Below are positions 20,194-59,068 of a DNA stretch of 64,000 nucleotides, piece after piece. Every line of letters begins with the position of its first letter. Within the stretch, counting starts at the first letter, position 1. Where the stretch lies: positions 1 through 64,000 of the IMG/VR virus record IMGVR_UViG_3300032116_000001; one strand, given 5' to 3'. The translations under genes and the position numbers were made by a program. The notes below the pieces were generated by a model, which did no database searches, was not told the origin of the DNA, and saw nothing but the letters and a program-made list of their open reading frames with translations.

Positions 20194-20240
20194 CTAAAAA
20201 ATCCCCTGTTTTTCAATAGGGGATTTGATATATCAATTGT

Positions 20241-20397: not shown

Positions 20398-20698
20398 CGG
20401 GGCGTGGCGAAATGGCAGACGCAGGGGACTTATAAAATGAGCACTTGTTTGTGAAAGCTGCAAGTGAATGCAATCAAATTCGGTGAAACCTTAACAGTTA
20501 GGCTGATGGCAATACCGAGCCAAGCTAACTCAAAACAGAGTTAGAAGGTGTAGAGACTAGATGGTTGCTGCCTAAGTCGAAAGATATGGCAAAGGTATAG
20601 TCCAGACCACAAAATCCTTTGGGATCGTAGTGAAAGCTATAGTGGTATGAAAATCCCTTAGTAGCAATACTGTGTGGGTTCGAGTCCCACCGCCCCGA
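20398..20698 (+). tRNA. tRNA-Leu (TAA) interrupted by a group I intron
   Basis: Exons 20398-20431 and 20650-20698; joining them restores GGGGA-CTT^AAAA-TCCCT. Confidence 0.92.
20432..20649 (+). mobile_element. group I intron (tRNA-Leu UAA type, IC3-like), 218 nt, no ORF
   Basis: Inserted after the U of the anticodon, ends in G; P AAATTCGGTGAAA, Q AATACCGAGC, R GTAGAGACTAGATGG, S AAGGTATAGTCC. Confidence 0.9.
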
Positions 20699-20748
20699 TT
20701 AGGTTATATATTGATTACTAATGCGCTTTGTGTGCTTTTAGTATAAGA

Positions 20749-23943: not shown

Positions 23944-24030
23944 GGATGGGTGACAGAGCGATCTATTGTAGCGGTCTTGAAAACCGCCGTGCCAAAAGCA
24001 CCGTGGGTTTGAATCCCACCCCATCCTCCA
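23944..24030 (+). tRNA. tRNA-Ser (TGA)
   Basis: GGATGGG/CCCATCC-TCCA; long variable arm. Confidence 0.92.
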
Positions 24031-24128
24031 TTTTGTAACAAAATCATAAAATTCAAAGCAGGTGTAGCTCAGTGGTAGAGCGCCCGCCGCGAAGGTTGAT
24101 GGTTGCAATATCGATAAATAGATTATGT

Positions 24129-24545
24129 ATGGCAATAACAAAATACAAAGGAGCCGTCGGGCTAACTAATGTAATGGCCTGTCTTGTCAATCAAAAAGCA
24201 AAAATCTTTGTTCCAATAGACGAAGACTGTCAATATGACCTGGTGGTAGATTATCAAAATTATCTTTACAGAGTGCAAGTTAAATATGCTGAGGCAAAAA
24301 ATGGCAAGATCGTTGTAAAGACGCGCTCAACGAATAACTATTGTGAAATTCGTTATACTAAAGATCATTTTGACGTGATTGCTGTTTGGGACAATGTTGG
24401 CAAAAAAGCATATTTTATTTCATCGAATTTAATCACAGAAGGAATGACGGAAATGACCTTGAGATTAGATGCACCAAAAAACAATCAAACTAAAAACATA
24501 AGATTGGCTCGTAATTATGAGCAATTTAATGCTGCGGTCGCATAG
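24129..24545 (+). CDS. PD-(D/E)XK homing endonuclease (I-Ssp6803I/PDDEXK_5-like)
   Basis: YDLVVD...RVQVK...YTKDHFD...LRLDAPKNNQ. Confidence 0.85.
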   Translation: MAITKYKGAVGLTNVMACLVNQKAKIFVPIDEDCQYDLVVDYQNYLYRVQVKYAEAKNGKIVVKTRSTNNYCEIRYTKDHFDVIAVWDNVGKKAYFISSNLITEGMTEMTLRLDAPKNNQTKNIRLARNYEQFNAAVA

Positions 24546-24613
24546 TGGTCGATTGCACCTCTCTTGTAAAGAGGAACTCCACACCGTGGGTTCGAATCCC
24601 ACCCGTAGCTCCA
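24531..24613 (+). tRNA. tRNA-Thr (TGT)
   Basis: GCTGCGG/CCGTAGC-TCCA; CCTCT-CTTGTAA-AGAGG; overlaps the endonuclease stop. Confidence 0.9.
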
Positions 24614-24725
24614 TTTTTCGCACATATGTGTCAGGGGTTCGAATCCCCTCTCCTGCTTTGAGTTGAGTGATGATATCCGATCATAAAAAATCCCCCTTTT
24701 TCTCAATAGTGATCGGATATATAAA

Positions 24726-25325
24726 GTATTGCTGTGAGCTAAATCAATTGACACAGCATGATGAAACCAAAATCATCTAAAAACAATAAGGTGCTCCATA
24801 TACGTCTGGGAAAGATAAATTAGACGTGGACACACTGTGATGTGGACTAATCACAGCGCACTGGGGCATGTGTGCAAGCCCGAAAAGCCTATCTTTACTG
24901 ATATAGTTAAAGAGAAAGAGCAGAGAGTTAAGGCTTAAAATAAACTCCATGCGTTCGTAAGGATGAACTCAAAGACGAGTTCAGTTATGACTAGGATACG
25001 AGAGGAGGGAGGCAATGAGTTTCTCTCCTCTCCCCGACAAAGCGATTTCCGACTGCTCATCGGAGAAGTGATCTAGTAAAACACTCAGAAAAACACTAGC
25101 GTAGGAAATGCGTTAATCCCTGATTTTTTATCGGTTTTTAGAGACAAAAAACTGTTCGTATAGGGCTTGCGGTAAGCCTCTTGTTTTAGCTAGGTGATCC
25201 TGTATGTAAAAACCAAGCGGATGGAACAAATCAATTTGTTTTCGCGAGCAAATGATCCATTGACTTTGGGGAACAGCGTAAGAACGTTTCGCCATGAGGC
25301 TTTGAGCAAAGTCTCGTTCCCCAAA
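24726..25325 (+). ncRNA. large structured ncRNA (~600 nt), ROOL/GOLLD-like
   Basis: No + strand ORF of 60 aa or more, own promoter, many helices, located between tRNAs. Confidence 0.65.
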
Positions 25326-25339
25326 AATAAAAAGATTCT

Positions 25340-25416
25340 GGGTATGTAGTTCAGTTGGTTAGAGCACCTGCCTGTCACGCAGGAAGTCGCGAGTTCAAGT
25401 CTCGTCATATCCGCCA
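25340..25416 (+). tRNA. tRNA-Asp (GTC)
   Basis: Canonical cloverleaf, CCA. Confidence 0.97.
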
Positions 25417-25436
25417 AAATTTCCAAAGGAGACAAA

Positions 25437-25652
25437 ATGAATAGACAAATAGAAAGCCTCGATCATCTGGTGTCTCTTGGGCTACTGACATCATATGAGT
25501 TTGTAAACGTGTCAGCCAATAACATTGAGGGCGAGATTTCAGAACATCATAATTCTGATCGATTGAAACTCATATTCCCGAATGGGTTGGAAGTGAAGAT
25601 CACTGCGATCACAACAGGCATGGAAGAAGATGCTCTTTTGAGATTGGAATAA
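25437..25652 (+). CDS. hypothetical protein
   Basis: AAGGAG SD. Confidence 0.65.
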   Translation: MNRQIESLDHLVSLGLLTSYEFVNVSANNIEGEISEHHNSDRLKLIFPNGLEVKITAITTGMEEDALLRLE

Positions 25653-25692
25653 AAATCCCCCATTTTCAGAAGAGTGATCGGATATAAGAAGT

Positions 25693-25950
25693 ATGGAAGC
25701 AAAGATTTATCGCCAGGCTCATCCCCAGGATGAAAATCGTCTTTCTGTTGCCGCTGATATTTTTGCACGGCGGCACCGCCTTGAGATTTCTCACCACAGC
25801 GATTTGAACTACACTGATCTAACTGGGGCAAACAATTTGGCTTTCCTTTGGGAACGCGCAAAGTGCCGAGCATTACTTATGCCCTTGAAGATCAGTGAAA
25901 AGCATCAAATTTGGCTTGAGAACGACAAAATTGTTCTGACTCCTTACTGA
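25693..25950 (+). CDS. hypothetical protein
   Basis: Promoter motif upstream. Confidence 0.7.
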   Translation: MEAKIYRQAHPQDENRLSVAADIFARRHRLEISHHSDLNYTDLTGANNLAFLWERAKCRALLMPLKISEKHQIWLENDKIVLTPY

Positions 25951-26000
25951 CAATGGTCCCGCTTGGGAACACTATCGGCAAGACCAATCGTAGAACAAGT

Positions 26001-26291
26001 ATGAATAGTTCAGACAACATTCTTCAGGAACAAGAAATCGAAAGAATTCTCACGTCATTTATCCAATCGCGAAATCGACAAGAAAGAGAATGCTCATTGG
26101 AGGAATGCCAAGGGATTATTAATTGGGCAGCTGAAGTTATTGTGAATTACACAGCCTTGCAGCTTTTATTAAAAGGTCATGCGGAAATCGAAGATTTTGA
26201 TGGTGATGATGTTCGTCTCACCACTCCCGAAAACATTCAGTTTCATACTCCGCTGATGAATCAAATCGCGAGGCAAATTGAAGAACTTTAA
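26001..26291 (+). CDS. hypothetical protein
   Basis: 96-aa ORF. Confidence 0.6.
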   Translation: MNSSDNILQEQEIERILTSFIQSRNRQERECSLEECQGIINWAAEVIVNYTALQLLLKGHAEIEDFDGDDVRLTTPENIQFHTPLMNQIARQIEEL

Positions 26292-26488
26292 TAATTGATT
26301 TTCCAACGAAGCACCTTGGCAAGAGCTTTTTCTAACAGTTTTGGCTCCATGCCAAGAAGGACACGTGCCCTGAAACCACGTGTTAATGCTGAAAATATGG
26401 GGACAATCGGGAGAGACCGATAAAAAATCCCTCTTTTTTGGGGAATGAAATTCATATAAGAAATGTGAAGTGAAAGAAAAGTAAAAAG

Positions 26489-26634
26489 TTCGCCCGAATT
26501 AAATATCGGAACAATCCTTTCCTGAAGAGGTTTAGCACTAATTAGGATTAAAGACACTTGGAGTGGGAACTCTGTTTGAAAGAAGTAACATATACCCCGC
26601 AATGGTAACAGACCTACCACCGAGGCGAAAAATT
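26489..26634 (+). ncRNA. putative structured ncRNA, copy A (related to 50739..50906)
   Basis: Identical 22-nt and 19-nt end blocks shared with 50739..50906; the ends pair (TTCGCC/GGCGAA). Confidence 0.55.
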
Positions 26635-26801
26635 GCTAGATAAATGGAAATCTAGCTCAACGAGCACAGACACCTTGTAGCTAAAAGCGTCGCATGTGAG
26701 AGCCATTGCGGAAGTGGTGTGACAATCGGGAGAGACCGATAAAAAATCCCCTTTTTTCGAGGGATAAAACAATATAAAAGATATCAGTGCAGTGCGGAGT
26801 G

Positions 26802-26934
26802 ATAGCTACACGAAGCACCTGGAAAAGCTAACCAGAGACACTGTGATGCTACGGTGGTGTATAGAGCACAGCAGAACGAATTGACCTCGGTCATGCAGGG
26901 ACGCAGGAGGCGACTTCGCTCGCCCCGTAGCTAT
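26802..26934 (+). ncRNA. putative structured ncRNA upstream of the tRNA-Ser pair
   Basis: Closing helix ATAGCTAC/GTAGCTAT; internal hairpins; motif shared with 24806-24857. Confidence 0.5.
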
Positions 26935-26942
26935 AATTTTTC

Positions 26943-27030
26943 GGAGAGTAAACCAGTCAAGGATTGGGGCATCCTGGAAAGATGATCGGATGTGCGAACA
27001 TCTACGGGGCAGGTCCGTTGCTCTCCTCCA
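26943..27030 (+). tRNA. tRNA-Ser (GGA), atypical T-loop
   Basis: GGAGAGT/GCTCTCC-TCCA; CATC-CTGGAAA-GATG; long variable arm. Confidence 0.75.
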
Positions 27031-27047
27031 TTTTCATTCAAAAGAAC

Positions 27048-27133
27048 GGAACGTAATCCCGACAGGTGCTGGGCGATGTTTGCTAAACAATCGGCTTTGT
27101 AAAAGAAGTGGGGTTCGAGTCCTCTGCGTTCCT
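27048..27133 (+). tRNA. tRNA-Ser (GCT)
   Basis: GGAACGT/GCGTTCC; anticodon loop TTGCTAA; GGTTCGAGTCC; no encoded CCA. Confidence 0.75.
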
Positions 27134-27178
27134 AAAAAAATCCCCCTTTCTTTTTGTTCCTGGAGTGATATATAAAAC

Positions 27179-27379
27179 ATGAAAGATTTTGAAGACGTGG
27201 TTTTTGGAAGTTCCGATGAATGGAATGGGGCAGCTGGTATTGTGCCTGAGGACAAGTTTTACGTTTCTTATCCCGATTGTTCCATTCAGATTTGCGACAC
27301 CGAAGGAGAGTGTGCGGCAATTCAAAGAGAATTCCGTGTTATGCACCGCCGAAACCCGATCACTGGCGAAGCAACTTAA
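27179..27379 (+). CDS. hypothetical protein
   Basis: Promoter motif upstream. Confidence 0.7.
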   Translation: MKDFEDVVFGSSDEWNGAAGIVPEDKFYVSYPDCSIQICDTEGECAAIQREFRVMHRRNPITGEAT

Positions 27380-27419
27380 AAATCCCCTTTCTTTCGTGGC
27401 CTAATCGGATATATAAGAT

Positions 27420-27602
27420 ATGGAACGAGACTACCAAGTTGATATTAGTGCCACGGCTGTGGTGCGAACCTGTGTTGAAGTTCGGGCTTCCAGCCCCGAA
27501 GAGGCCGTAGGCTTGGCCATCGAAGTTGCTGAAAGCGGCAACGTGATCTGGAAGTATGACGGCGTAAACGATGGGACTATGATCGTTTTTAACGTGGAAT
27601 AA
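27420..27602 (+). CDS. small hypothetical protein (VxAxSxEEA motif)
   Basis: Promoter motif; VEVRASSPEEAV. Confidence 0.7.
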   Translation: MERDYQVDISATAVVRTCVEVRASSPEEAVGLAIEVAESGNVIWKYDGVNDGTMIVFNVE

Positions 27603-27643
27603 AAAATCCCCTTTTTGTTCACAAGCAAAATCATATAAAAGAC

Positions 27644-27994
27644 ATGGGAAACACATCTTACAAACCCACGCTCGGATTCTATATCACTTTTGGTATTTTG
27701 AATCTTGTCACTTCGATTTTTTCAGGCTACGCCGTCTCGACTCTCTGGGAATGGTTTGTTGTTCCCCTTGGGGTTCCTAGCATCGGGCTTTTTCATGCGA
27801 TTGGGCTCGTTGTCTTGGGGACTGTGTTCACGATGGGAATCACCCAAGTTCTTGCGATTCTTAACATGAACACTAGCGAGAATGTTTCACCAGAAGAGAG
27901 TTACACTCGTTTGAATGTTGTCCTCGGGTTTGTTGGCATTATGCTTCCCGCAATTGCTCTTGGCTCGGGATACATCTGCAAGATTTTGATGTAA
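27644..27994 (+). CDS. membrane protein, paralog of 28819..29187
   Basis: LWxWFxxPxG...xFxAI shared; 3 TM. Confidence 0.75.
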   Translation: MGNTSYKPTLGFYITFGILNLVTSIFSGYAVSTLWEWFVVPLGVPSIGLFHAIGLVVLGTVFTMGITQVLAILNMNTSENVSPEESYTRLNVVLGFVGIMLPAIALGSGYICKILM

Positions 27995-28039
27995 AACATT
28001 ATCCAGGGGGAGTAATTCCCCCTGGAAGCGAGCATAAAC

Positions 28040-28306
28040 ATGAAATTCAAAGTTTGCAACATTCAACATGGCGAAGAAGATTTTTGTGTCATGGTGTCTA
28101 TTCATCAAGACCCGATCAGTGATCTGACCGTAGTGCAATGCTTGGATTATGATATTGCTTCACAAGGCAAAACCGAAGAAGCTGCGATGATTCGATTTGA
28201 GCGATGTTTTATTGTCGCTATCGAAGCCTTTGAAAAATACGGCGTGAACTTTCGAGAAAGTCTTGCTGAAGCTCCGCCCGAATACTGGAAAGGCTGCCCG
28301 ATTTAA
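28040..28306 (+). CDS. HicB-like N-terminal domain protein
   Basis: QCLDYDIASQGKTEEAA resembles the HicB xxGxTxEEA motif. Confidence 0.5.
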   Translation: MKFKVCNIQHGEEDFCVMVSIHQDPISDLTVVQCLDYDIASQGKTEEAAMIRFERCFIVAIEAFEKYGVNFRESLAEAPPEYWKGCPI

Positions 28307-28381
28307 GCTGATATGGCGCAGTGGTAGCGCATCTCCTTGGTAAGGAGAAGGCCGCGAGTTCAAATCTCGCTATCAGCTCCA
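28307..28381 (+). tRNA. tRNA-Thr (GGT)
   Basis: Canonical cloverleaf, CCA. Confidence 0.97.
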
Positions 28382-28423
28382 AAAAATCCCCCATTTTCTA
28401 AACTCTTATCGGATATATAAGAT

Positions 28424-28765
28424 ATGAGCAATTACATCAAGAAGGCAGATGAAATTTACAAAGCAATCGAAGACCTGAGCCGAAATGACGATGGAGTTGA
28501 ACGATTTAAGAAAGCCGAAGAAGATGATCTGATTGACGTTGAGGTTTATGGCAAGGACTTTCGTCACGCAAAGCATGGTGAAGGATGCTATGTTCTGCAA
28601 ATCACGATTTGCGATAAGGATTATTGCGCCGTTTGGTTCAACACTGTTGGCGGCGATTGGATTGAAATCAATCACTATGAATTTTCCGAATGGCGTCAGC
28701 TATACAAGAAGTATATTTCCAACACTTCTAATGATATTTTGGGCGATGATTTGGTGACCAATTGA
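28424..28765 (+). CDS. hypothetical protein
   Basis: Promoter motif upstream. Confidence 0.7.
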   Translation: MSNYIKKADEIYKAIEDLSRNDDGVERFKKAEEDDLIDVEVYGKDFRHAKHGEGCYVLQITICDKDYCAVWFNTVGGDWIEINHYEFSEWRQLYKKYISNTSNDILGDDLVTN

Positions 28766-28818
28766 AAATCGGGTAAAAAAATCCCCTTTTTTCATTCAAT
28801 CAGAATCATATAAGAAAT

Positions 28819-29187
28819 ATGGGTAATGATCCTGTAGTAATCAAAGTTCGGGCGTCGGCCTTTTTCGGATTTCTTTTCATGTCTGTTTTGGTGGGCATCT
28901 ATCGAGCCTTCGTACTGACTCAAATTTGGCTTTGGTTTGCCACCCCTCATGGAGCCACGCCTTTGACGATCTTCCAGGCTATTGTGATTATGCTTGTAAC
29001 CTCACTTCTGTCATATTCCAAGTCATTGTCAAATACTCAATATAAAGTCGAAGAAAAGACTGAGACTAAGCCGAATGAAAAGTTCAATGATTTTGTGAGT
29101 ATTCTTTACAGCAATCTCAACTCTTCCCTAGTGTTGATCACGTTCGTTTACATCACTTGTTTCGCCATCTACAAACTGGCCCCCTAA
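28819..29187 (+). CDS. membrane protein, paralog of 27644..27994
   Basis: Promoter motif; paralogy. Confidence 0.75.
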   Translation: MGNDPVVIKVRASAFFGFLFMSVLVGIYRAFVLTQIWLWFATPHGATPLTIFQAIVIMLVTSLLSYSKSLSNTQYKVEEKTETKPNEKFNDFVSILYSNLNSSLVLITFVYITCFAIYKLAP

Positions 29188-29235
29188 AAGATTTGTCCCC
29201 TGTAAACCAGGGGGCAAACTCCCCATAATATCACC

Positions 29236-29496
29236 ATGAATTCAGAAACCGAAAAGCAAGAAAGTATTCTTGTCGTGAAAGATCACAAGACGCTCAGAAA
29301 TCATCCCGTGCCCGTGCTGAAAGCCTGGTTGAATAGATTTGTTGAGAATGGAGATCAAGTGACAATCAAACAAGTGGACGATGACATTCTATTTACTTGT
29401 CCTAATCGATCACTTGAATTTTATGTTCTTAAACTTTGTGATGTGATCGATGAATTTGGATTTGCAAAAACACTCTTCCCCGAGGACACGATCTAA
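29236..29496 (+). CDS. hypothetical protein
   Basis: 86-aa ORF. Confidence 0.6.
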   Translation: MNSETEKQESILVVKDHKTLRNHPVPVLKAWLNRFVENGDQVTIKQVDDDILFTCPNRSLEFYVLKLCDVIDEFGFAKTLFPEDTI

Positions 29497-29540
29497 AAAA
29501 TCCCCCTTTTTTGCACGACGAAACAGATATATAAAAAGTA

Positions 29541-29735
29541 ATGGTAATTTTCAACAAAGGTGATCGAGTTCAAATCTCCGCAAAAGAATCCACTTCCGTG
29601 GATGAATGGGGTAGAATCTCCTCGACTGGAACCGTGGAAAGCAACATCCCAGACCAAAATGGCGAAATCTTAGTGCATGCTGATGGCCTTTTGGCTATGA
29701 TTAGTGTTCTGCCTACAGAATTGACGAAAATCTAA
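29541..29735 (+). CDS. small SH3-like protein
   Basis: FNKGDRVQI...GTV...ELTKI. Confidence 0.6.
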   Translation: MVIFNKGDRVQISAKESTSVDEWGRISSTGTVESNIPDQNGEILVHADGLLAMISVLPTELTKI

Positions 29736-29753
29736 AACAACGTAAAACACCTT

Positions 29754-29831
29754 GGGGGTGTAGCTTAGTTGGACTAAAGCAAACCGCTCATAACGGTTAG
29801 ATCGTGGGATCGTAGCCCACCGCCCCCACCA
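29754..29831 (+). tRNA. tRNA with CAT anticodon (Ile2 or elongator Met)
   Basis: G1-C72 paired, AACCG-CTCATAA-CGGTT, atypical T-loop ATCGTAG. Confidence 0.85.
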
Positions 29832-29873
29832 AATTTCCCCTTTTTTCACCCGATCAGAATCATATAATAGATA

Positions 29874-30353
29874 ATGAACATCTCAGTTAGAAACGCAAAG
29901 GTTGACGCACATAATTCCCAGGAAACTCTGTGCTTTTCGGCGCAAATAACCATTGATGACAAACTTGCTTTTTATGCCGAAAACAATGGCACTGGCGGAA
30001 CTAATACTTATTATCTCAACACTGATGAAGATCAATCCGCACAATTCCTTGAAGATGCAGAGGAATTTGCTAAGAATCTAACTGGAGAAAATTTTGAAGC
30101 ACTGGATTTGCTGATCGGGTCACTGGTAAGCGCATACACAACCGCGAACGAAAAGATTGACACGACCATTTTTATGATCGAAGATTCACAAGTTTACACC
30201 GTGGATTTTGGAAAGAATCTTACCCTGTTGGATATTGTAGGCTTTGTTAAAGACAATCCCAACGCAAAGGTTCTGAATATGCTGAATTTTTCAGACGCAG
30301 TTCGCGAAATCGCCCTGGCAGATTTGAAGAACCAGGATTTTTCCCAAGTTTAA
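29874..30353 (+). CDS. hypothetical phage protein
   Basis: SQETLCFSA...AENNGTGG. Confidence 0.75.
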   Translation: MNISVRNAKVDAHNSQETLCFSAQITIDDKLAFYAENNGTGGTNTYYLNTDEDQSAQFLEDAEEFAKNLTGENFEALDLLIGSLVSAYTTANEKIDTTIFMIEDSQVYTVDFGKNLTLLDIVGFVKDNPNAKVLNMLNFSDAVREIALADLKNQDFSQV

Positions 30354-41065: not shown

Positions 41066-41188
41066 GTAAATTGACAGGAAACTAATCGGGGCAATGAAGC
41101 CCTGATTTTTTATAACTTTCTACGATTGTGCGGCACGATCATTATAAAAATCCCCCTTATTAATCGGCTCAATTTACTATAATGATAT

Positions 41189-43482: not shown

Positions 43483-43850
43483 GTGACTGGGAACAAGAAA
43501 GGGGGAAGTAACTCCCTCTTTCTTTATGACTTTCCGTGATTATGCGCCACGATCATTAAAAATCCCCTATATCTTATATTCCAATCGGATATATAAGATA
43601 TAATGAAAACCAAACATGTTTTTCGAGTTTACCCCAAGAATGCAACATCTTCCGAGGATGCTTTGGTAATTGAGAAAACCATAAGCCCGAAATCTGTCCT
43701 TCGAGTAATGGGAAACCTTCTTGGCAAGTATAATGCTTCAGAAGTGGCTTTATTGAAATCCGAGGACAAATAAGACTTTTTTAACAAAAAGTCCCAAAAT
43801 CATAGGACGATTTTGTTTTTTGATCGTATAATAGATAAGGACACTTTATT

Positions 43851-45902: not shown

Positions 45903-46021
45903 GTTGATAAAAATACCCCTGTCCACCAAGGGGTATTTTTTATTACTTTCTACGATTATGGTTCACGATCATTATAAAAAATCCCCTGTTTTCGAGAAAT
46001 CAAAACAATATATAAAATAGA

Positions 46022-47706: not shown

Positions 47707-47823
47707 GCTTTATATATCCGATTGTGCTACGGCAGAAAGGGGATTTTTTATGACTTTCTAAGGTTATGTGCCACGATCATAAAAAATCCCTTGCTTTTTG
47801 TGTTTCAAGCGGATATATAAGAT

Positions 47824-48300: not shown

Positions 48301-48394
48301 TGCGACACTATATCATTTTTATGACTTTCTACGATTGTGTGGCACGATCATAAAAAATCCCCCTAATAAAGCTGAGTAATCGGATATATAATGT

Positions 48395-48474
48395 GGGGCA
48401 AATAGCTCAGTAAAGACATATGGGAATGTAACAGTAGAGGTTTCCGCGTATGTTCAAATCCTGTTGCTCCACCA
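48395..48474 (+). ncRNA. tRNA-Ala-like mini RNA lacking an anticodon arm
   Basis: GGGGCAA/TTGCTCC-ACCA with G3:U70; own promoter. Confidence 0.55.
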
Positions 48475-49723: not shown

Positions 49724-50599
49724 TTAGGCCGTCGCCAGTTCTTTCTTTGCTTCCAGGCTCTTGGCCTTGCCTCGGCCCATAATGAAGTTTGCGGCTTTCC
49801 CCGCAAGTCCTGCGGCCTGCACGACCATTTTGGGGTCGTCATTCAGAACCTTGAGCCAGCCCTGAATATAGGCCTGGGTGTTCTCGGTGTCATTGTCGAT
49901 GCCGATTTCTTGGCAGAGAAAGGCGGCTGTGAGTTCTGCTACCAGTTCCTCGCGGCTGTAACCTTCCTTGTCAAGCGTTGAGATTTGCATGACTTCGGGT
50001 CGAGCCAATCGGGATTCGTGGCCCGTCGCGTGACCAAGTTCATGGAATAAGGTCGCGTAATAGGCTTCGGAACTGACAAAAGATTCGATAATAGGCATTT
50101 GGACCCAATCGCCATAAGGCGAATAACAGGCACGATTTCCACCGTGACGAATCTCAGGCACCAGCGGCATTTCTTGGACCACTTCCTCACAACGTTCGAT
50201 GCGGCGATTGTCTTTCAGTTCCTCAATCGGCGGCAGGTCGAGCCCTTCGGTTTGCTCCACATTGAAAACATAAAATTGCTTCAATACGGGGTAGGAACCT
50301 GTCTTGCCAGTCTTATCATCCTCATAACTCACCTGCTTCCAGAACACAATCGGTGTGCCCTTCTCGCCCTTCTTGATTCGCCCGCCCATCTTGTTGATTT
50401 GATTGCAAGTCATCCAGCGCGGGTCGGCAAAGGTAGACATTGACAAAAGCAGAAGGTTGAGCCCGCTATACTTGGTTCCGCTACTGGGGTTGCAGGGTCG
50501 AATCACCGACCAGGGTCGCTTCCAAGCAACGTTTCCGCTCTTTAGGCCCTCGATGATGGTGTTGGTTACGATTTCGTAGACTTCGGACTTCTTCTTCAT
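49724..50599 (-). CDS. ardC: ArdC-like antirestriction protein (ssDNA-binding + zincin-like)
   Basis: WKRPW, YSGLN, IKKGEKG, VFNVEQ, YYATLFHELGHATGH, YSREELVAEL, AYIQGW. Confidence 0.92.
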   Translation of the reverse strand: MKKKSEVYEIVTNTIIEGLKSGNVAWKRPWSVIRPCNPSSGTKYSGLNLLLLSMSTFADPRWMTCNQINKMGGRIKKGEKGTPIVFWKQVSYEDDKTGKTGSYPVLKQFYVFNVEQTEGLDLPPIEELKDNRRIERCEEVVQEMPLVPEIRHGGNRACYSPYGDWVQMPIIESFVSSEAYYATLFHELGHATGHESRLARPEVMQISTLDKEGYSREELVAELTAAFLCQEIGIDNDTENTQAYIQGWLKVLNDDPKMVVQAAGLAGKAANFIMGRGKAKSLEAKKELATA

Positions 50600-50738
50600 T
50601 AGTCTGCCTCTCTTTATATATCCGATTAGACTACGATAGAAAGGGGATTTTTTATGGCTTTCTGAGATTATGGGCCACGATCATTAAAAATCCCCTTTTC
50701 AAGTAAATTCATATAATATAATAGAAAGAAAGGCAAAA

Positions 50739-50906
50739 TTCGCCCGAATTAAATATCGGATTAATGAAGCGAACACATGAATAAATCATGTGGTGACATT
50801 GAAAATAAAGAGGCCGTAAAGATAAGACTTGGCATCCAAGTCAATGCCGTGAAGCCAAGGGCCAACGACATCTGGTGGAGCCTTACCACCACCGAGGCGA
50901 AAAATT
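50739..50906 (+). ncRNA. putative structured ncRNA, copy B (related to 26489..26634)
   Basis: Shared end blocks with copy A. Confidence 0.55.
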
Positions 50907-50960
50907 ACTTGACAATCGGAAAAATCCCCCTTTTCCACTAACACAATCGGATATATAAGC

Positions 50961-51064
50961 AGGTGTCCAGGGGGCGGTGAAAGTCCGCAAGGCGGCTGCA
51001 GAGTCATGAATCTGCAGTGCGGCTGGTTTCCTCTGCGCTTGCGCAAGACCACCCTGGCGAGCCT
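50961..51064 (+). ncRNA. GC-rich structured RNA / 5' leader
   Basis: CCAGGG/CCCTGG, GCGG/CCGC, CTGCAGA/TCTGCAG and TGCGC/GCGCA helices directly after a promoter. Confidence 0.5.
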
Positions 51065-51079
51065 TCACAAGAGAGAAAT

Positions 51080-51292
51080 ATGCACGAGTTTGGTATAACT
51101 TTCCAAAACATCCATGGCGAAACATATGACAGCCCCGAATATGTTGGTCTTACGCTGCCGTTTCGCCCAAATGTTGGTGATGAAATCCTGATTGTGGGGG
51201 CAGGAGGAAAATCCTACAGAGTCTTGAAAGTTGAATATTGCGCTGGGCCATCGTTTGGTGACTTTCTTCTCACCGTCGAACCCGTGGTGTAA
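51080..51292 (+). CDS. hypothetical protein
   Basis: LPFRPNVGDEI. Confidence 0.6.
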   Translation: MHEFGITFQNIHGETYDSPEYVGLTLPFRPNVGDEILIVGAGGKSYRVLKVEYCAGPSFGDFLLTVEPVV

Positions 51293-58953: not shown

Positions 58954-59068
58954 GCCAGACCATAAAGACTAGGGGCGCAAGCCCCTTTCTTTATAACTTT
59001 CTATGATTGTGTGCCACGATCATTATAAAAATCCCCTTTCTTTTGTGTTCTAATCGGATATATAAAAC

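What the first reader, a model, noticed from the sequence alone, without database searches (positions are those of the whole stretch)
26489..26634. Two-copy orphan RNA family with identical ends and variable middle (second copy at 50739-50906)
Both copies follow an AATTCATATA promoter variant. Both begin TTCGCCCGAATTAAATATCGGA (22 nt identical) and end ACCACCGAGGCGAAAAATT (19 nt identical). The termini pair (TTCGCC/GGCGAA; CTTGG/CCGAG), while the interiors differ. A constant scaffold with variable interior is the layout of guide, decoy or sponge RNAs.
Basis: partly seen in the sequence, partly recalled or inferred. Interest (0 to 1): 0.65.

Follow-up and report, generated by a model that had tools for sequence, protein, structure and literature searches.

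The report
Two-copy phage small RNA, shared ends
An uncultivated 379-kb freshwater phage carries two small non-coding RNA genes with letter-identical first 22 and last 19 bases and unrelated middles. At least one is transcribed in lake metatranscriptomes; it matches no described RNA family and its function is unknown.

Summary
Copies A (26489-26634) and B (50739-50906) share an identical 22-nt start and 19-nt end. No other copy exists in the 378,848-bp phage genome, and the interiors (105 vs 127 nt) are no more alike than shuffled sequence.

Each copy sits behind the phage's own early promoter. About 54 copies of that promoter lie on the + strand in the first 60 kb, most driving leaderless mRNAs. 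A and B are among the few units with no start codon.

In four freshwater metatranscriptomes, contigs cover 26486-26701 (one reaches 26794), while the flanking protein genes have no coverage.

A close relative phage differs in copy B by three changes, all fitting the predicted fold: one in a loop, one repairing a mismatch, one lengthening a hairpin tip.

I found no Rfam family, tRNA/tmRNA call, Ro or reverse-transcriptase gene, conserved ORF, antisense target in the phage, or diverged homologue in any collection searched.

Best reading: a new, lineage-restricted pair of early structured sRNAs whose constant ends form a common terminal handle around a variable body. Guide, decoy or sponge roles remain untested.

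The parts
26402..26431 (+). 30-nt block GACAATCGGGAGAGACCGATAAAAAATCCC, upstream copy. It ends in the AAAATCCC box of copy A's promoter.
   Evidence: The same block recurs at 26721-26750. A shortened form (TGACAATCGG followed by AAAAATCCCC) follows copy B.
26424..26459 (+). Early promoter of copy A: AAAATCCC box (26424-26431) and -10-like AATTCATATAA (26449-26459).
   Evidence: It matches the promoter architecture seen about 54 times on the + strand in 1-60 kb. Function as a promoter is inferred from this recurrence and from gene starts 2-8 nt downstream elsewhere.
26463..26488 (+). Purine-rich leader of copy A. The predicted transcription start is near 26463, where leaderless ATGs sit at other promoters; here it reads ATG-TGA.
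   Evidence: The leader is similar to that of copy B. The start site is inferred, not mapped.
26489..26510 (+). 5' constant segment of copy A: 5' strand of terminal helix P1 (UUCGCC) and hairpin CCGA-AUUAAAUA-UCGG.
   Evidence: Identical to 50739-50760.
26511..26615 (+). Variable interior of copy A (105 nt), predicted as a multi-hairpin body.
   Evidence: No conserved ORF (my reading of the frames).
26616..26634 (+). 3' constant segment of copy A: 3' strand of a 7-nt-loop hairpin, CCGA, 3' strand of P1 (GGCGAA) and an A-rich tail.
   Evidence: Identical to 50888-50906. Fold.
26635..26701 (+). 3' extension specific to transcript A: hairpin GCUAGAU/AUCUAGC (26635-26656) and further sequence. Two RNA contigs end at 26700/26701.
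   Evidence: In the fold, UCGCAU (26690-26695) pairs with AUGUGA at the predicted start.
26721..26750 (+). Downstream copy of the 30-nt GACAATCGG...AAAAAATCCC block. It doubles as the box of the next promoter.
50687..50722 (+). Early promoter of copy B: AAAATCCC box (50687-50694) and AATTCATATAATATAAT (50706-50722). It diverges from the ArdC promoter on the - strand (box at 50643-50652).
50723..50738 (+). Purine-rich leader of copy B (start site inferred).
50739..50760 (+). 5' constant segment of copy B.
50761..50887 (+). Variable interior of copy B (127 nt). It holds three interior hairpins (CACAUGA/UCAUGUG, GACUUGG/CCAAGUC, AUGCCGU/ACGACAU) and the 5' strand and loop of a fourth (GGUGG/CCACC) whose 3' strand runs into the 3' constant segment.
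   Evidence: Fold z = -3.4. Pair probabilities are 0.5-1.0. All three differences in the relative phage fit these hairpins.
50888..50906 (+). 3' constant segment of copy B.
50910..50930 (+). TGACAATCGG followed directly by the AAAAATCCCC box of the next promoter. This bounds RNA B on its 3' side.

Best explanation
A and B are two paralogous, independently transcribed, early-expressed small non-coding RNA genes of a huge freshwater phage.

Proposed mechanism: each is made from its own early promoter. The constant 5' and 3' segments come together as a terminal helix (UUCGCC/GGCGAA) next to a constant hairpin. This gives both RNAs the same closed 'handle', which encloses a different multi-hairpin body in each. 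The handle probably stabilises the RNA and is probably read sequence-specifically by one common partner, most likely a protein. The different bodies would give the two RNAs different specificities in trans during host takeover.

Shown: the repeat layout, the promoter context, the lack of a conserved coding frame, the presence of RNA A in metatranscriptomes, and the absence from known families.

Inferred: the + strand, the transcript ends, the fold, expression of copy B, the existence of a common binding partner, and any trans function.
For: - The ends are exactly identical and the interiors are at shuffle level. All 41 constant positions are kept, including loop and tail bases. That is more than a helix alone needs and points to sequence-specific recognition.
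- Both copies lie behind the phage's early promoter. About 38 of about 54 such promoters are followed within 8 nt by a start codon. A and B are not, except for ATG-TGA in A.
- RNA contigs from four runs in four studies cover 26486-26655, 26500-26701, 26508-26700 and 26509-26794. The regions 25400-26400 and 26800-28200 have zero depth, so DNA carry-over is not the explanation.
- P1 is predicted at 0.73-1.0 for five of its six pairs in both copies (the sixth is 0.23 in A, 0.80 in B). The fold of B is better than all 200 shuffles, z = -3.4.
- A relative phage (ArdC 97% identical) has an ORF call across RNA B. Its three differences are AAA to ACA in a hairpin loop, GAC to GGC turning a C.A mismatch into C-G, and a 12-nt insertion at a hairpin tip that adds GCAU/AUGC pairs. 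The same global fold is kept for all 32 possible codon spellings, and is 7-10 kcal/mol more stable.
- No reading frame is shared by A and B across the constant 3' block (my reading; ORF list).
Against: - The fold of A is not better than shuffles (z = -1.7 for the core and -1.2 extended).
- P1 also forms with shuffled interiors, so the interiors are not tuned to it.
- There is no covariation for P1, because the ends never vary.
- Beyond P1 the two folds differ in detail (CUUGG/CCGAG in A only).
- Contigs give neither strand nor true ends. The X15 contig runs on across the next promoter.
- Expression of B was not examined (reads cap).
- The relative's changes are inferred from a protein, so third-codon positions are unseen.
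- No partner protein, target or paralogous neighbouring gene was found.
Confidence: 0.5

Rival explanations
1. They are cis-acting transcription-control RNA elements of the early region, like lambda nut or HK022 put sites. A constant hairpin just downstream of an early promoter would modify the polymerase or its termination behaviour; the RNA seen is merely the stable remnant.
For: There are two copies per genome, each directly behind an early promoter, with a constant hairpin near the 5' end. One RNA contig continues across the next promoter (26509-26794).
Against: Nearly every downstream gene has its own promoter, so long-range antitermination seems unnecessary. A second constant block 105-127 nt downstream that pairs with the first is not a nut/put feature. 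Three of four contigs stop at or before 26701.
Confidence: 0.12
2. The conserved blocks work as DNA: binding sites, recombination or cassette boundaries, or origin-like elements. Transcription would be incidental to their lying behind promoters.
For: Exact identity of short blocks beside unrelated interiors is also what recombination or gene conversion at cassette boundaries would give. A 30-nt block flanks copy A on both sides, and a short form follows B.
Against: RNA A accumulates where neighbouring early mRNAs are undetectable, which argues for a stable folded RNA. The relative's changes in B fit RNA helices. The RNA contigs that were laid on copy A showed no deletion or hybrid joint; these are RNA contigs, which drop rare variants, so they say little about DNA recombinants. 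The metagenome copies retrieved are identical.
Confidence: 0.1
3. They are processed stable RNAs tied to the phage's tRNA system, analogous to T4 RNA C and RNA D. They would be tRNA-like or processing-related molecules rather than regulators.
For: They lie within a region holding 15+ tRNA genes and several odd tRNA-like genes. The phage encodes RtcB. T4 makes two small stable RNAs of unknown role from its tRNA region (PMC3014915). Both copies have a hairpin with a 7-nt loop next to the terminal helix.
Against: ARAGORN and the Rfam tRNA/tmRNA models find nothing in A or B, even at low thresholds. There is no T-loop sequence. There is no similarity to T4 rnaC or rnaD, which also lack shared termini. 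Each RNA has its own promoter rather than being cut from a tRNA precursor.
Confidence: 0.1
4. Copy B encodes a small protein (the 54-aa ORF at 50777-50941), and the repeat blocks are shared untranslated or terminal parts of small genes.
For: Gene callers predict the ORF (P0122) and a 68-aa counterpart in the relative (P0130). The 12-nt insertion is in frame.
Against: Copy A has no + strand ORF of 20 codons or more. The constant 3' block would be read in different frames in A and B. The ORF in B has no Shine-Dalgarno sequence and no leaderless start. It runs on through the next promoter, and its C-terminus changes frame in the relative. There are no homologues beyond that one strain.
Confidence: 0.05
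5. The functional strand is the - strand. The constant hairpin followed by a T-rich run would act as a terminator or leader for leftward transcription, for example upstream of ardC.
For: The simple scan reports terminator-like sites on the - strand at 26510-26493 and 50745-50731, because the purine-rich leader reads as a T-run there. The contigs do not give strand.
Against: Around copy A every called gene in the 25.4-28.3 kb stretch examined runs on the + strand. ardC has its own complete early promoter between itself and B. The hairpins are weak (4-6 pairs). Both copies have a correctly spaced + strand promoter.
Confidence: 0.05

Closest known systems
Bacteriophage T4 RNA C and RNA D (species 1 and 2 RNAs)
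   Same: These are small stable RNAs of 139 and 119 nt, encoded among phage tRNA genes, two per genome. Their function is still unknown (PMC3014915, PMC9697503; annotation).
   Different: There is no sequence similarity. T4 rnaC carries a tRNA-like T-arm, which A and B lack. rnaC and rnaD do not share constant termini. They lie directly beside tRNA-Arg in the T4 tRNA gene cluster and are transcribed from that region (PMC3014915), whereas A and B each have their own early promoter.
Lambda nut and HK022 put sites (my own knowledge of these systems)
   Same: Two copies per phage genome, each just downstream of an early promoter, with a conserved hairpin in the nascent RNA.
   Different: Nut and put elements are compact cis elements within long operons. 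Here a second constant block 105-127 nt away pairs with the first, the unit appears as a short stable RNA, and downstream genes have their own promoters.
Y RNAs / bacterial YrlA (Ro-associated RNAs)
   Same: Paired 5' and 3' ends form a conserved stem that serves as a protein handle, with a variable interior. They also occur in phages.
   Different: There is no TROVE/Ro gene in the phage, no Rfam Y_RNA or YrlA match and no tRNA-like module.
Scaffold-plus-variable-part RNAs (box C/D sRNAs, crRNAs, bridge/omega RNAs)
   Same: The layout is the same: constant terminal parts with a variable middle.
   Different: There are no C/D boxes. The interiors (105-127 nt) are folded and far longer than guides. 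No cognate protein gene (Cas, IS110, IscB/TnpB-type) was noticed nearby, and no paralogous neighbour genes exist. No complementary target was found in the phage.
Diversity-generating retroelement TR/VR pairs and retron msr-msd
   Same: Two related blocks with conserved ends (DGR), or an RNA whose ends pair (retron a1/a2).
   Different: There is no reverse transcriptase in the genome. The interiors differ in length and are unrelated, rather than differing at adenines.

Membership tests
Any Rfam 15 family | Covariance-model match at or near the family's gathering score | tested here: not met
   No match over A or B at gathering thresholds. At E up to 5 the only overlapping hits are chance-level ones in B (ToxI, E = 4.6, 16 bits against a cut-off of 50; snR82 on the opposite strand, E = 3.4, 12.5 bits against 60) and none in A.
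tRNA / tmRNA / tRNA-like | Cloverleaf or acceptor-T-arm module with a T-loop, detectable by ARAGORN or Rfam tRNA/tmRNA models | tested here: not met
   ARAGORN at default settings, with introns allowed and at lowered thresholds, finds nothing inside A or B proper. No tRNA-clan hit appears.
Y RNA / YrlA | Ro (TROVE) protein partner gene and a Ro-binding stem with a tRNA-like domain | tested here: not met
   PF05731 is absent from the genome. There is no Rfam match. A host Ro cannot be excluded.
Retron ncRNA / DGR template repeat | Adjacent or genomic reverse transcriptase; for DGR, equal-length TR/VR differing at A positions | tested here: not met
   PF00078 is absent. The interiors are 105 vs 127 nt and alike only at shuffle level.
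T4 RNA C / RNA D | Sequence or structural homology to T4 rnaC or rnaD | tested here: not met
   The alignment shows no shared blocks. The rnaC T-arm is absent from A and B.
Base-pairing (antisense/guide) sRNA | Extended complementarity of the variable part to a target RNA or DNA | tested here: inconclusive
   In the phage genome the longest complementary matches are 13 nt, at E of 0.9 or more, which is chance level. The host genome is unknown, so host targets and CRISPR repeats are untested.
Small protein gene | ORF conserved between copies, with start signals and homologues | tested here: not met
   There is no ORF in A. The reading frames differ across the shared 3' block. The only homologue of the B ORF is the near-identical strain, and its C-terminus is frame-shifted.
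Genuine transcribed RNA gene (generic) | Promoter and detectable discrete transcript | tested here: met
   The promoter context is shown. RNA contigs appear in four metatranscriptomes over copy A only, with silent flanks. Copy B was not tested. Strand and exact ends could not be determined from contigs.

The most novel reading that the evidence does not exclude
The constant ends are a portable protein-binding handle. The phage uses this handle to display interchangeable RNA 'cargo' domains early in infection: a modular RNA system (decoy, sponge or guide) aimed at host factors or defences, with each paralogue aimed at a different target. This would be a new class of phage host-takeover RNA. Its position among early genes and next to the anti-restriction gene ardC is compatible with this reading but does not demonstrate it.
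Probability: 0.15. Interest if true: 0.75.

Novelty: new variant of a known kind. Interest (0 to 1): 0.45.

Why it matters
Few small RNAs are known from virulent phages, and their functions are mostly unknown (PMC8244752, PMC3014915). Here an uncultivated huge phage gives two dedicated early promoters to non-coding RNAs that share an exactly conserved terminal module, and at least one of them accumulates in natural communities.

If the handle binds a defined partner, this would be a compact, testable example of modular RNA design in phage host takeover. It would also be a possible source of a stabilising RNA scaffold.

If not, it still adds an expressed orphan RNA family. Together with the neighbouring ~480-nt RNA, it shows that the early region of this phage is unusually rich in non-coding transcripts.

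Tried and rejected
**Searches for relatives**
- Megablast and blastn of both loci against 50,697 phage records gave nothing relevant.
- An exact 21-mer scan of IMG/VR gave none.
- A 16-mer of the 3' block gave 17 hits, all chance: none has TTCGCC upstream.
- A promoter-pattern scan for kin phages gave one stray hit.
- The two-anchor pattern found nothing in viral contigs.
- In metagenome contigs it gave 34 hits: identical copies of the same phage plus GC-rich coding chance hits.
- In 185,579 species genomes it gave 25 hits, all GC-rich chance hits.
- Kin phages sought through a 697-aa phage protein and through ArdC in IMG/VR gave none.
- More distant ArdC-bearing phage contigs (L076-L081, 55-65% identity, GC 46-56%) have neither the promoter motif nor the RNA.
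- The one close relative (JGI sample 3300059473) could not be read as DNA. Only its ORF call across RNA B was usable.

**Hypotheses rejected**
- DGR or retron: no reverse transcriptase.
- Y RNA with a phage Ro: no TROVE gene.
- Hammerhead or other ribozymes: no Rfam hit. A CUGAAGA box occurs in A only.
- MITE or BOX-like repeat: only two copies, unrelated interiors, very weak terminal inverted repeat.
- Paralogous partner genes next to A and B: none.
- Similarity between the RNAs downstream of A and of B: none beyond the promoter block.
- Circular form: no permuted joints or loose ends over A in the RNA contigs. This is weak evidence.

**Not done**
- I did not build a covariance model. With two sequences and unrelated interiors it would add nothing to the 3-mismatch scans.

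- Read laying was given exactly 6,000 letters.
- No alternative genetic code was used.
- The big representative-protein search was not used.

Full report
**Context.** The window is the first 64 kb of a 378,848-bp IMG/VR virus record that CheckV rates complete. It is a huge phage found in several freshwater metagenome studies. It encodes DnaK, GroEL, RtcB, a DnaB-like helicase and at least 15 tRNAs. It has no close relative among 50,697 deposited phage genomes or in IMG/VR.

The 22-mer at 26489-26510 and 50739-50760 and the 19-mer at 26616-26634 and 50888-50906 are exact + strand repeats.
- Allowing three mismatches, each occurs only twice in the window, against chance expectations of 0.00 and 0.04.
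- The 22-mer occurs only twice in the whole genome.
- The interiors between them (105 and 127 nt) are no more similar than shuffled sequence: global z = 1.1, local z = -0.6.

The layout 'identical ends, unrelated middle' is therefore real and sharp-edged.

**Promoter context.**
- An AAAATCCC box, typically followed after 17 nt by ATCGGATATATAA, occurs about 54 times on the + strand in the first 60 kb and rarely elsewhere.
- At about 38 of these sites a start codon follows the -10-like box within 8 nt, so most early mRNAs are leaderless or nearly so.
- A and B are among the few units without a gene start. A has only ATG-TGA at that position and B has nothing.
- Both continue with a similar purine-rich leader before the constant 22-mer.
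- A sigma-70 consensus scan does not see these promoters. Their function is inferred from recurrence and position.
- A 30-nt block (GACAATCGG...AAAAAATCCC) brackets copy A, and a shortened form follows copy B.

**Coding is unlikely.**
- Copy A has no + strand ORF.
- The constant 3' block would be read in different frames in the short ORFs that cross it in A and B.
- The 54-aa ORF in B lacks start signals and runs through the next promoter.
- Its only homologue is the counterpart in a near-identical strain, where the C-terminus is in another frame.

**Expression.** Six freshwater metatranscriptome runs hold 7-10% of the sampled words of 25600-28000. I laid four of them, from four studies, on 24000-29999.
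- Contigs cover 26486-26655, 26500-26701, 26508-26700 and 26509-26794, all at 99% identity or better and lying wholly on the stretch.
- The regions 25400-26400 and 26800-28200 have no coverage in any run.
- This selective presence rules out DNA carry-over and shows that copy A is part of a comparatively stable transcript.
- Contigs cannot give strand, true ends or abundance. I assign the + strand from the promoter.

**Structure.**
- The terminal helix UUCGCC/GGCGAA is predicted at 0.73-1.0 for five of its six pairs in both RNAs; the sixth (innermost) pair scores 0.23 in A and 0.80 in B. It also forms when the interiors are shuffled, so it is a property of the constant ends themselves.
- The constant 5' segment can also form the hairpin CCGA-AUUAAAUA-UCGG. 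Alternatively its UCGG can pair with the CCGA of the 3' segment. The balance differs between A and B.
- B folds better than all 200 shuffles (z = -3.4). A does not (z = -1.7).
- Both have a short hairpin with a 7-nt loop immediately before ACCGAGGCGAA.

**Comparative evidence is thin but points the same way.** One close relative exists in JGI sample 3300059473: its ArdC is 97% identical and its 112-aa neighbour of copy A is 91% identical. Its DNA could not be retrieved, but a gene caller's ORF across its RNA B is on record (P0130). Read back onto the nucleotides, it differs from ours in three ways:
- AAA to ACA in the loop of the CACAUGA/UCAUGUG hairpin;
- GAC to GGC, which converts the single C.A mismatch of helix AUGCCGU/ACGACAU into C-G;
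- a 12-nt insertion at the tip of the GACUUGG/CCAAGUC hairpin that adds GCAU/AUGC pairs.

For all 32 possible codon spellings the same global fold is predicted, and it is 7-10 kcal/mol more stable. All visible changes are thus helix-neutral or helix-improving. Third-codon positions are invisible, so this is supportive, not conclusive.

A low-coverage ENA contig of the same phage shows two A-to-C changes in the A-rich tail after GGCGA; the first of them falls on the outermost U-A pair of P1.

**What it is not.**
- No Rfam family matches.
- No tRNA or tmRNA is called inside A or B, even with introns allowed or at low thresholds.
- The genome has no Ro/TROVE gene and no reverse transcriptase, so a phage Y-RNA system, a retron and a DGR are out.
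- No complementarity beyond chance links A or B to any place in the phage genome.
- No paralogous protein genes accompany the two copies.
- Pattern scans of viral, metagenome and genome collections returned only identical copies of this phage plus GC-rich chance hits.
- More distant ArdC-bearing phage contigs lack both the promoter and the RNA.

**Closest known.** By context, the nearest precedent is T4 RNA C and RNA D: two small stable RNAs in the T4 tRNA region whose roles remain unknown (PMC3014915, PMC9697503).
- I fetched them. They show no similarity to A or B and do not share termini with each other. rnaC has a tRNA-like T-arm, which A and B lack.
- By layout, nut/put sites, Y RNAs and scaffold-plus-guide RNAs are analogies only. 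Each fails a defining feature tested here.
- For comparison, no leaderless transcripts and only one doubtful sRNA were found in phiKZ (PMC8244752).

**Interpretation.** I am fairly confident (about 0.8) that these are genuine non-coding RNA genes.
- The specific mechanism rests on the perfect conservation of all 41 constant positions, on the predicted terminal helix, and on the independence of the two bodies. That mechanism is a shared terminal handle, read sequence-specifically by one partner, which stabilises and presents two different structured bodies that act in trans early in infection. I rate it at about 0.35-0.5.
- Rivals are a cis-acting nut/put-like element, DNA-level sites or cassette boundaries, a tRNA-system-related stable RNA, a small protein in B, and a - strand function. 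None is excluded, but each fits fewer of the observations.
- Guide, decoy or sponge functions are untested, because the host is unknown.

**Verdict.** This is a real, expressed, orphan two-member RNA family of a huge phage. It is a new family within the known but poorly understood kind 'small stable RNAs of virulent phages'. Interest is moderate.

Noticed in passing
window 1-60000, + strand (e.g. 1933, 2903, 13620, 21651, 59028): A phage-specific early promoter, AAAATCCC-N17-ATCGGATATATAA, occurs about 54 times. About 38 copies have ATG/GTG/TTG within 8 nt of the -10-like box, implying mostly leaderless early mRNAs. Stop codons and tRNA CCA ends abut the next promoter box. PhiKZ, by contrast, showed no leaderless transcripts (PMC8244752).
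   Followed up: partly
window 24738-25219 (promoter box at 24687): A non-coding RNA of about 480 nt with no + strand ORF. It is covered at depth 53-85 in three metatranscriptomes, about 15-fold above RNA A. Fold z = -3.4. No Rfam match and no similar phage sequence. It may be the more abundant novelty in this region.
   Followed up: partly
window 27047-27133 and 26848-26938: An odd tRNA that matches the tRNA-Sec model (35.6 bits, below the cut-off) but has anticodon GCU. ARAGORN calls it Ser only at a lowered threshold. A second weak Ser(UGA)-like call lies just upstream. These could be allo-tRNA-like genes with unusual cloverleaves (compare PMC5389517).
   Followed up: partly
window 48395-48474: A tRNA-like gene directly at a promoter's start position, ending in CCACCA. 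Neither ARAGORN nor Rfam calls it.
   Followed up: partly
window 50962-51079: A GC-rich, apparently structured leader of about 120 nt lies between an early promoter and the 70-aa ORF 51080-51292. This is unusual among the otherwise leaderless early genes. No Rfam match.
   Followed up: no
window 41117-41146, 43529-43558, 45948-45977, 47753-47782, 48324-48353, 50657-50686, 58998-59027 and others: A repeated hairpin element (about CTTTCTAYGATTGTG..CACGATCATTAT) lies immediately upstream of the AAAAATCCCC box of a subset of early promoters. It may be a terminator or regulator site.
   Followed up: no
window 20421-20624: A group I intron match (58 bits, above the cut-off) lies behind a promoter at 20198, with a tRNA-like T-arm sequence just after it at about 20670-20700.
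   Followed up: no
window 24632-24649: An isolated T-arm-like sequence (GGGGTTCGAATCCCC) lies just after tRNA-Thr. It weakly matches the 3' end of the tmRNA model. Abundant foreign tRNA contigs also align there.
   Followed up: no
window 49724-50599 (- strand) and 50610-50652: An ArdC-type anti-restriction gene (ArdcN plus zincin peptidase domains) with its own early promoter, divergent from RNA B's promoter. A graded series of ArdC homologues at 55-65% identity lies on other phage-like metagenome contigs beside Macro-domain, RNA-ligase and GP88 genes.
   Followed up: partly
G000:C1:223423-225168, 290577-292217, 282643-283749, 297854-299659: Outside the window the phage encodes DnaK, GroEL, RtcB and an NAD synthetase homologue.
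   Followed up: no
L082:3250-3615 (ENA contig, coverage 3.3): A near-identical copy of the RNA B locus reads GGCGACACATT instead of GGCGAAAAATT. This may be a strain variant or a low-coverage error.
   Followed up: no
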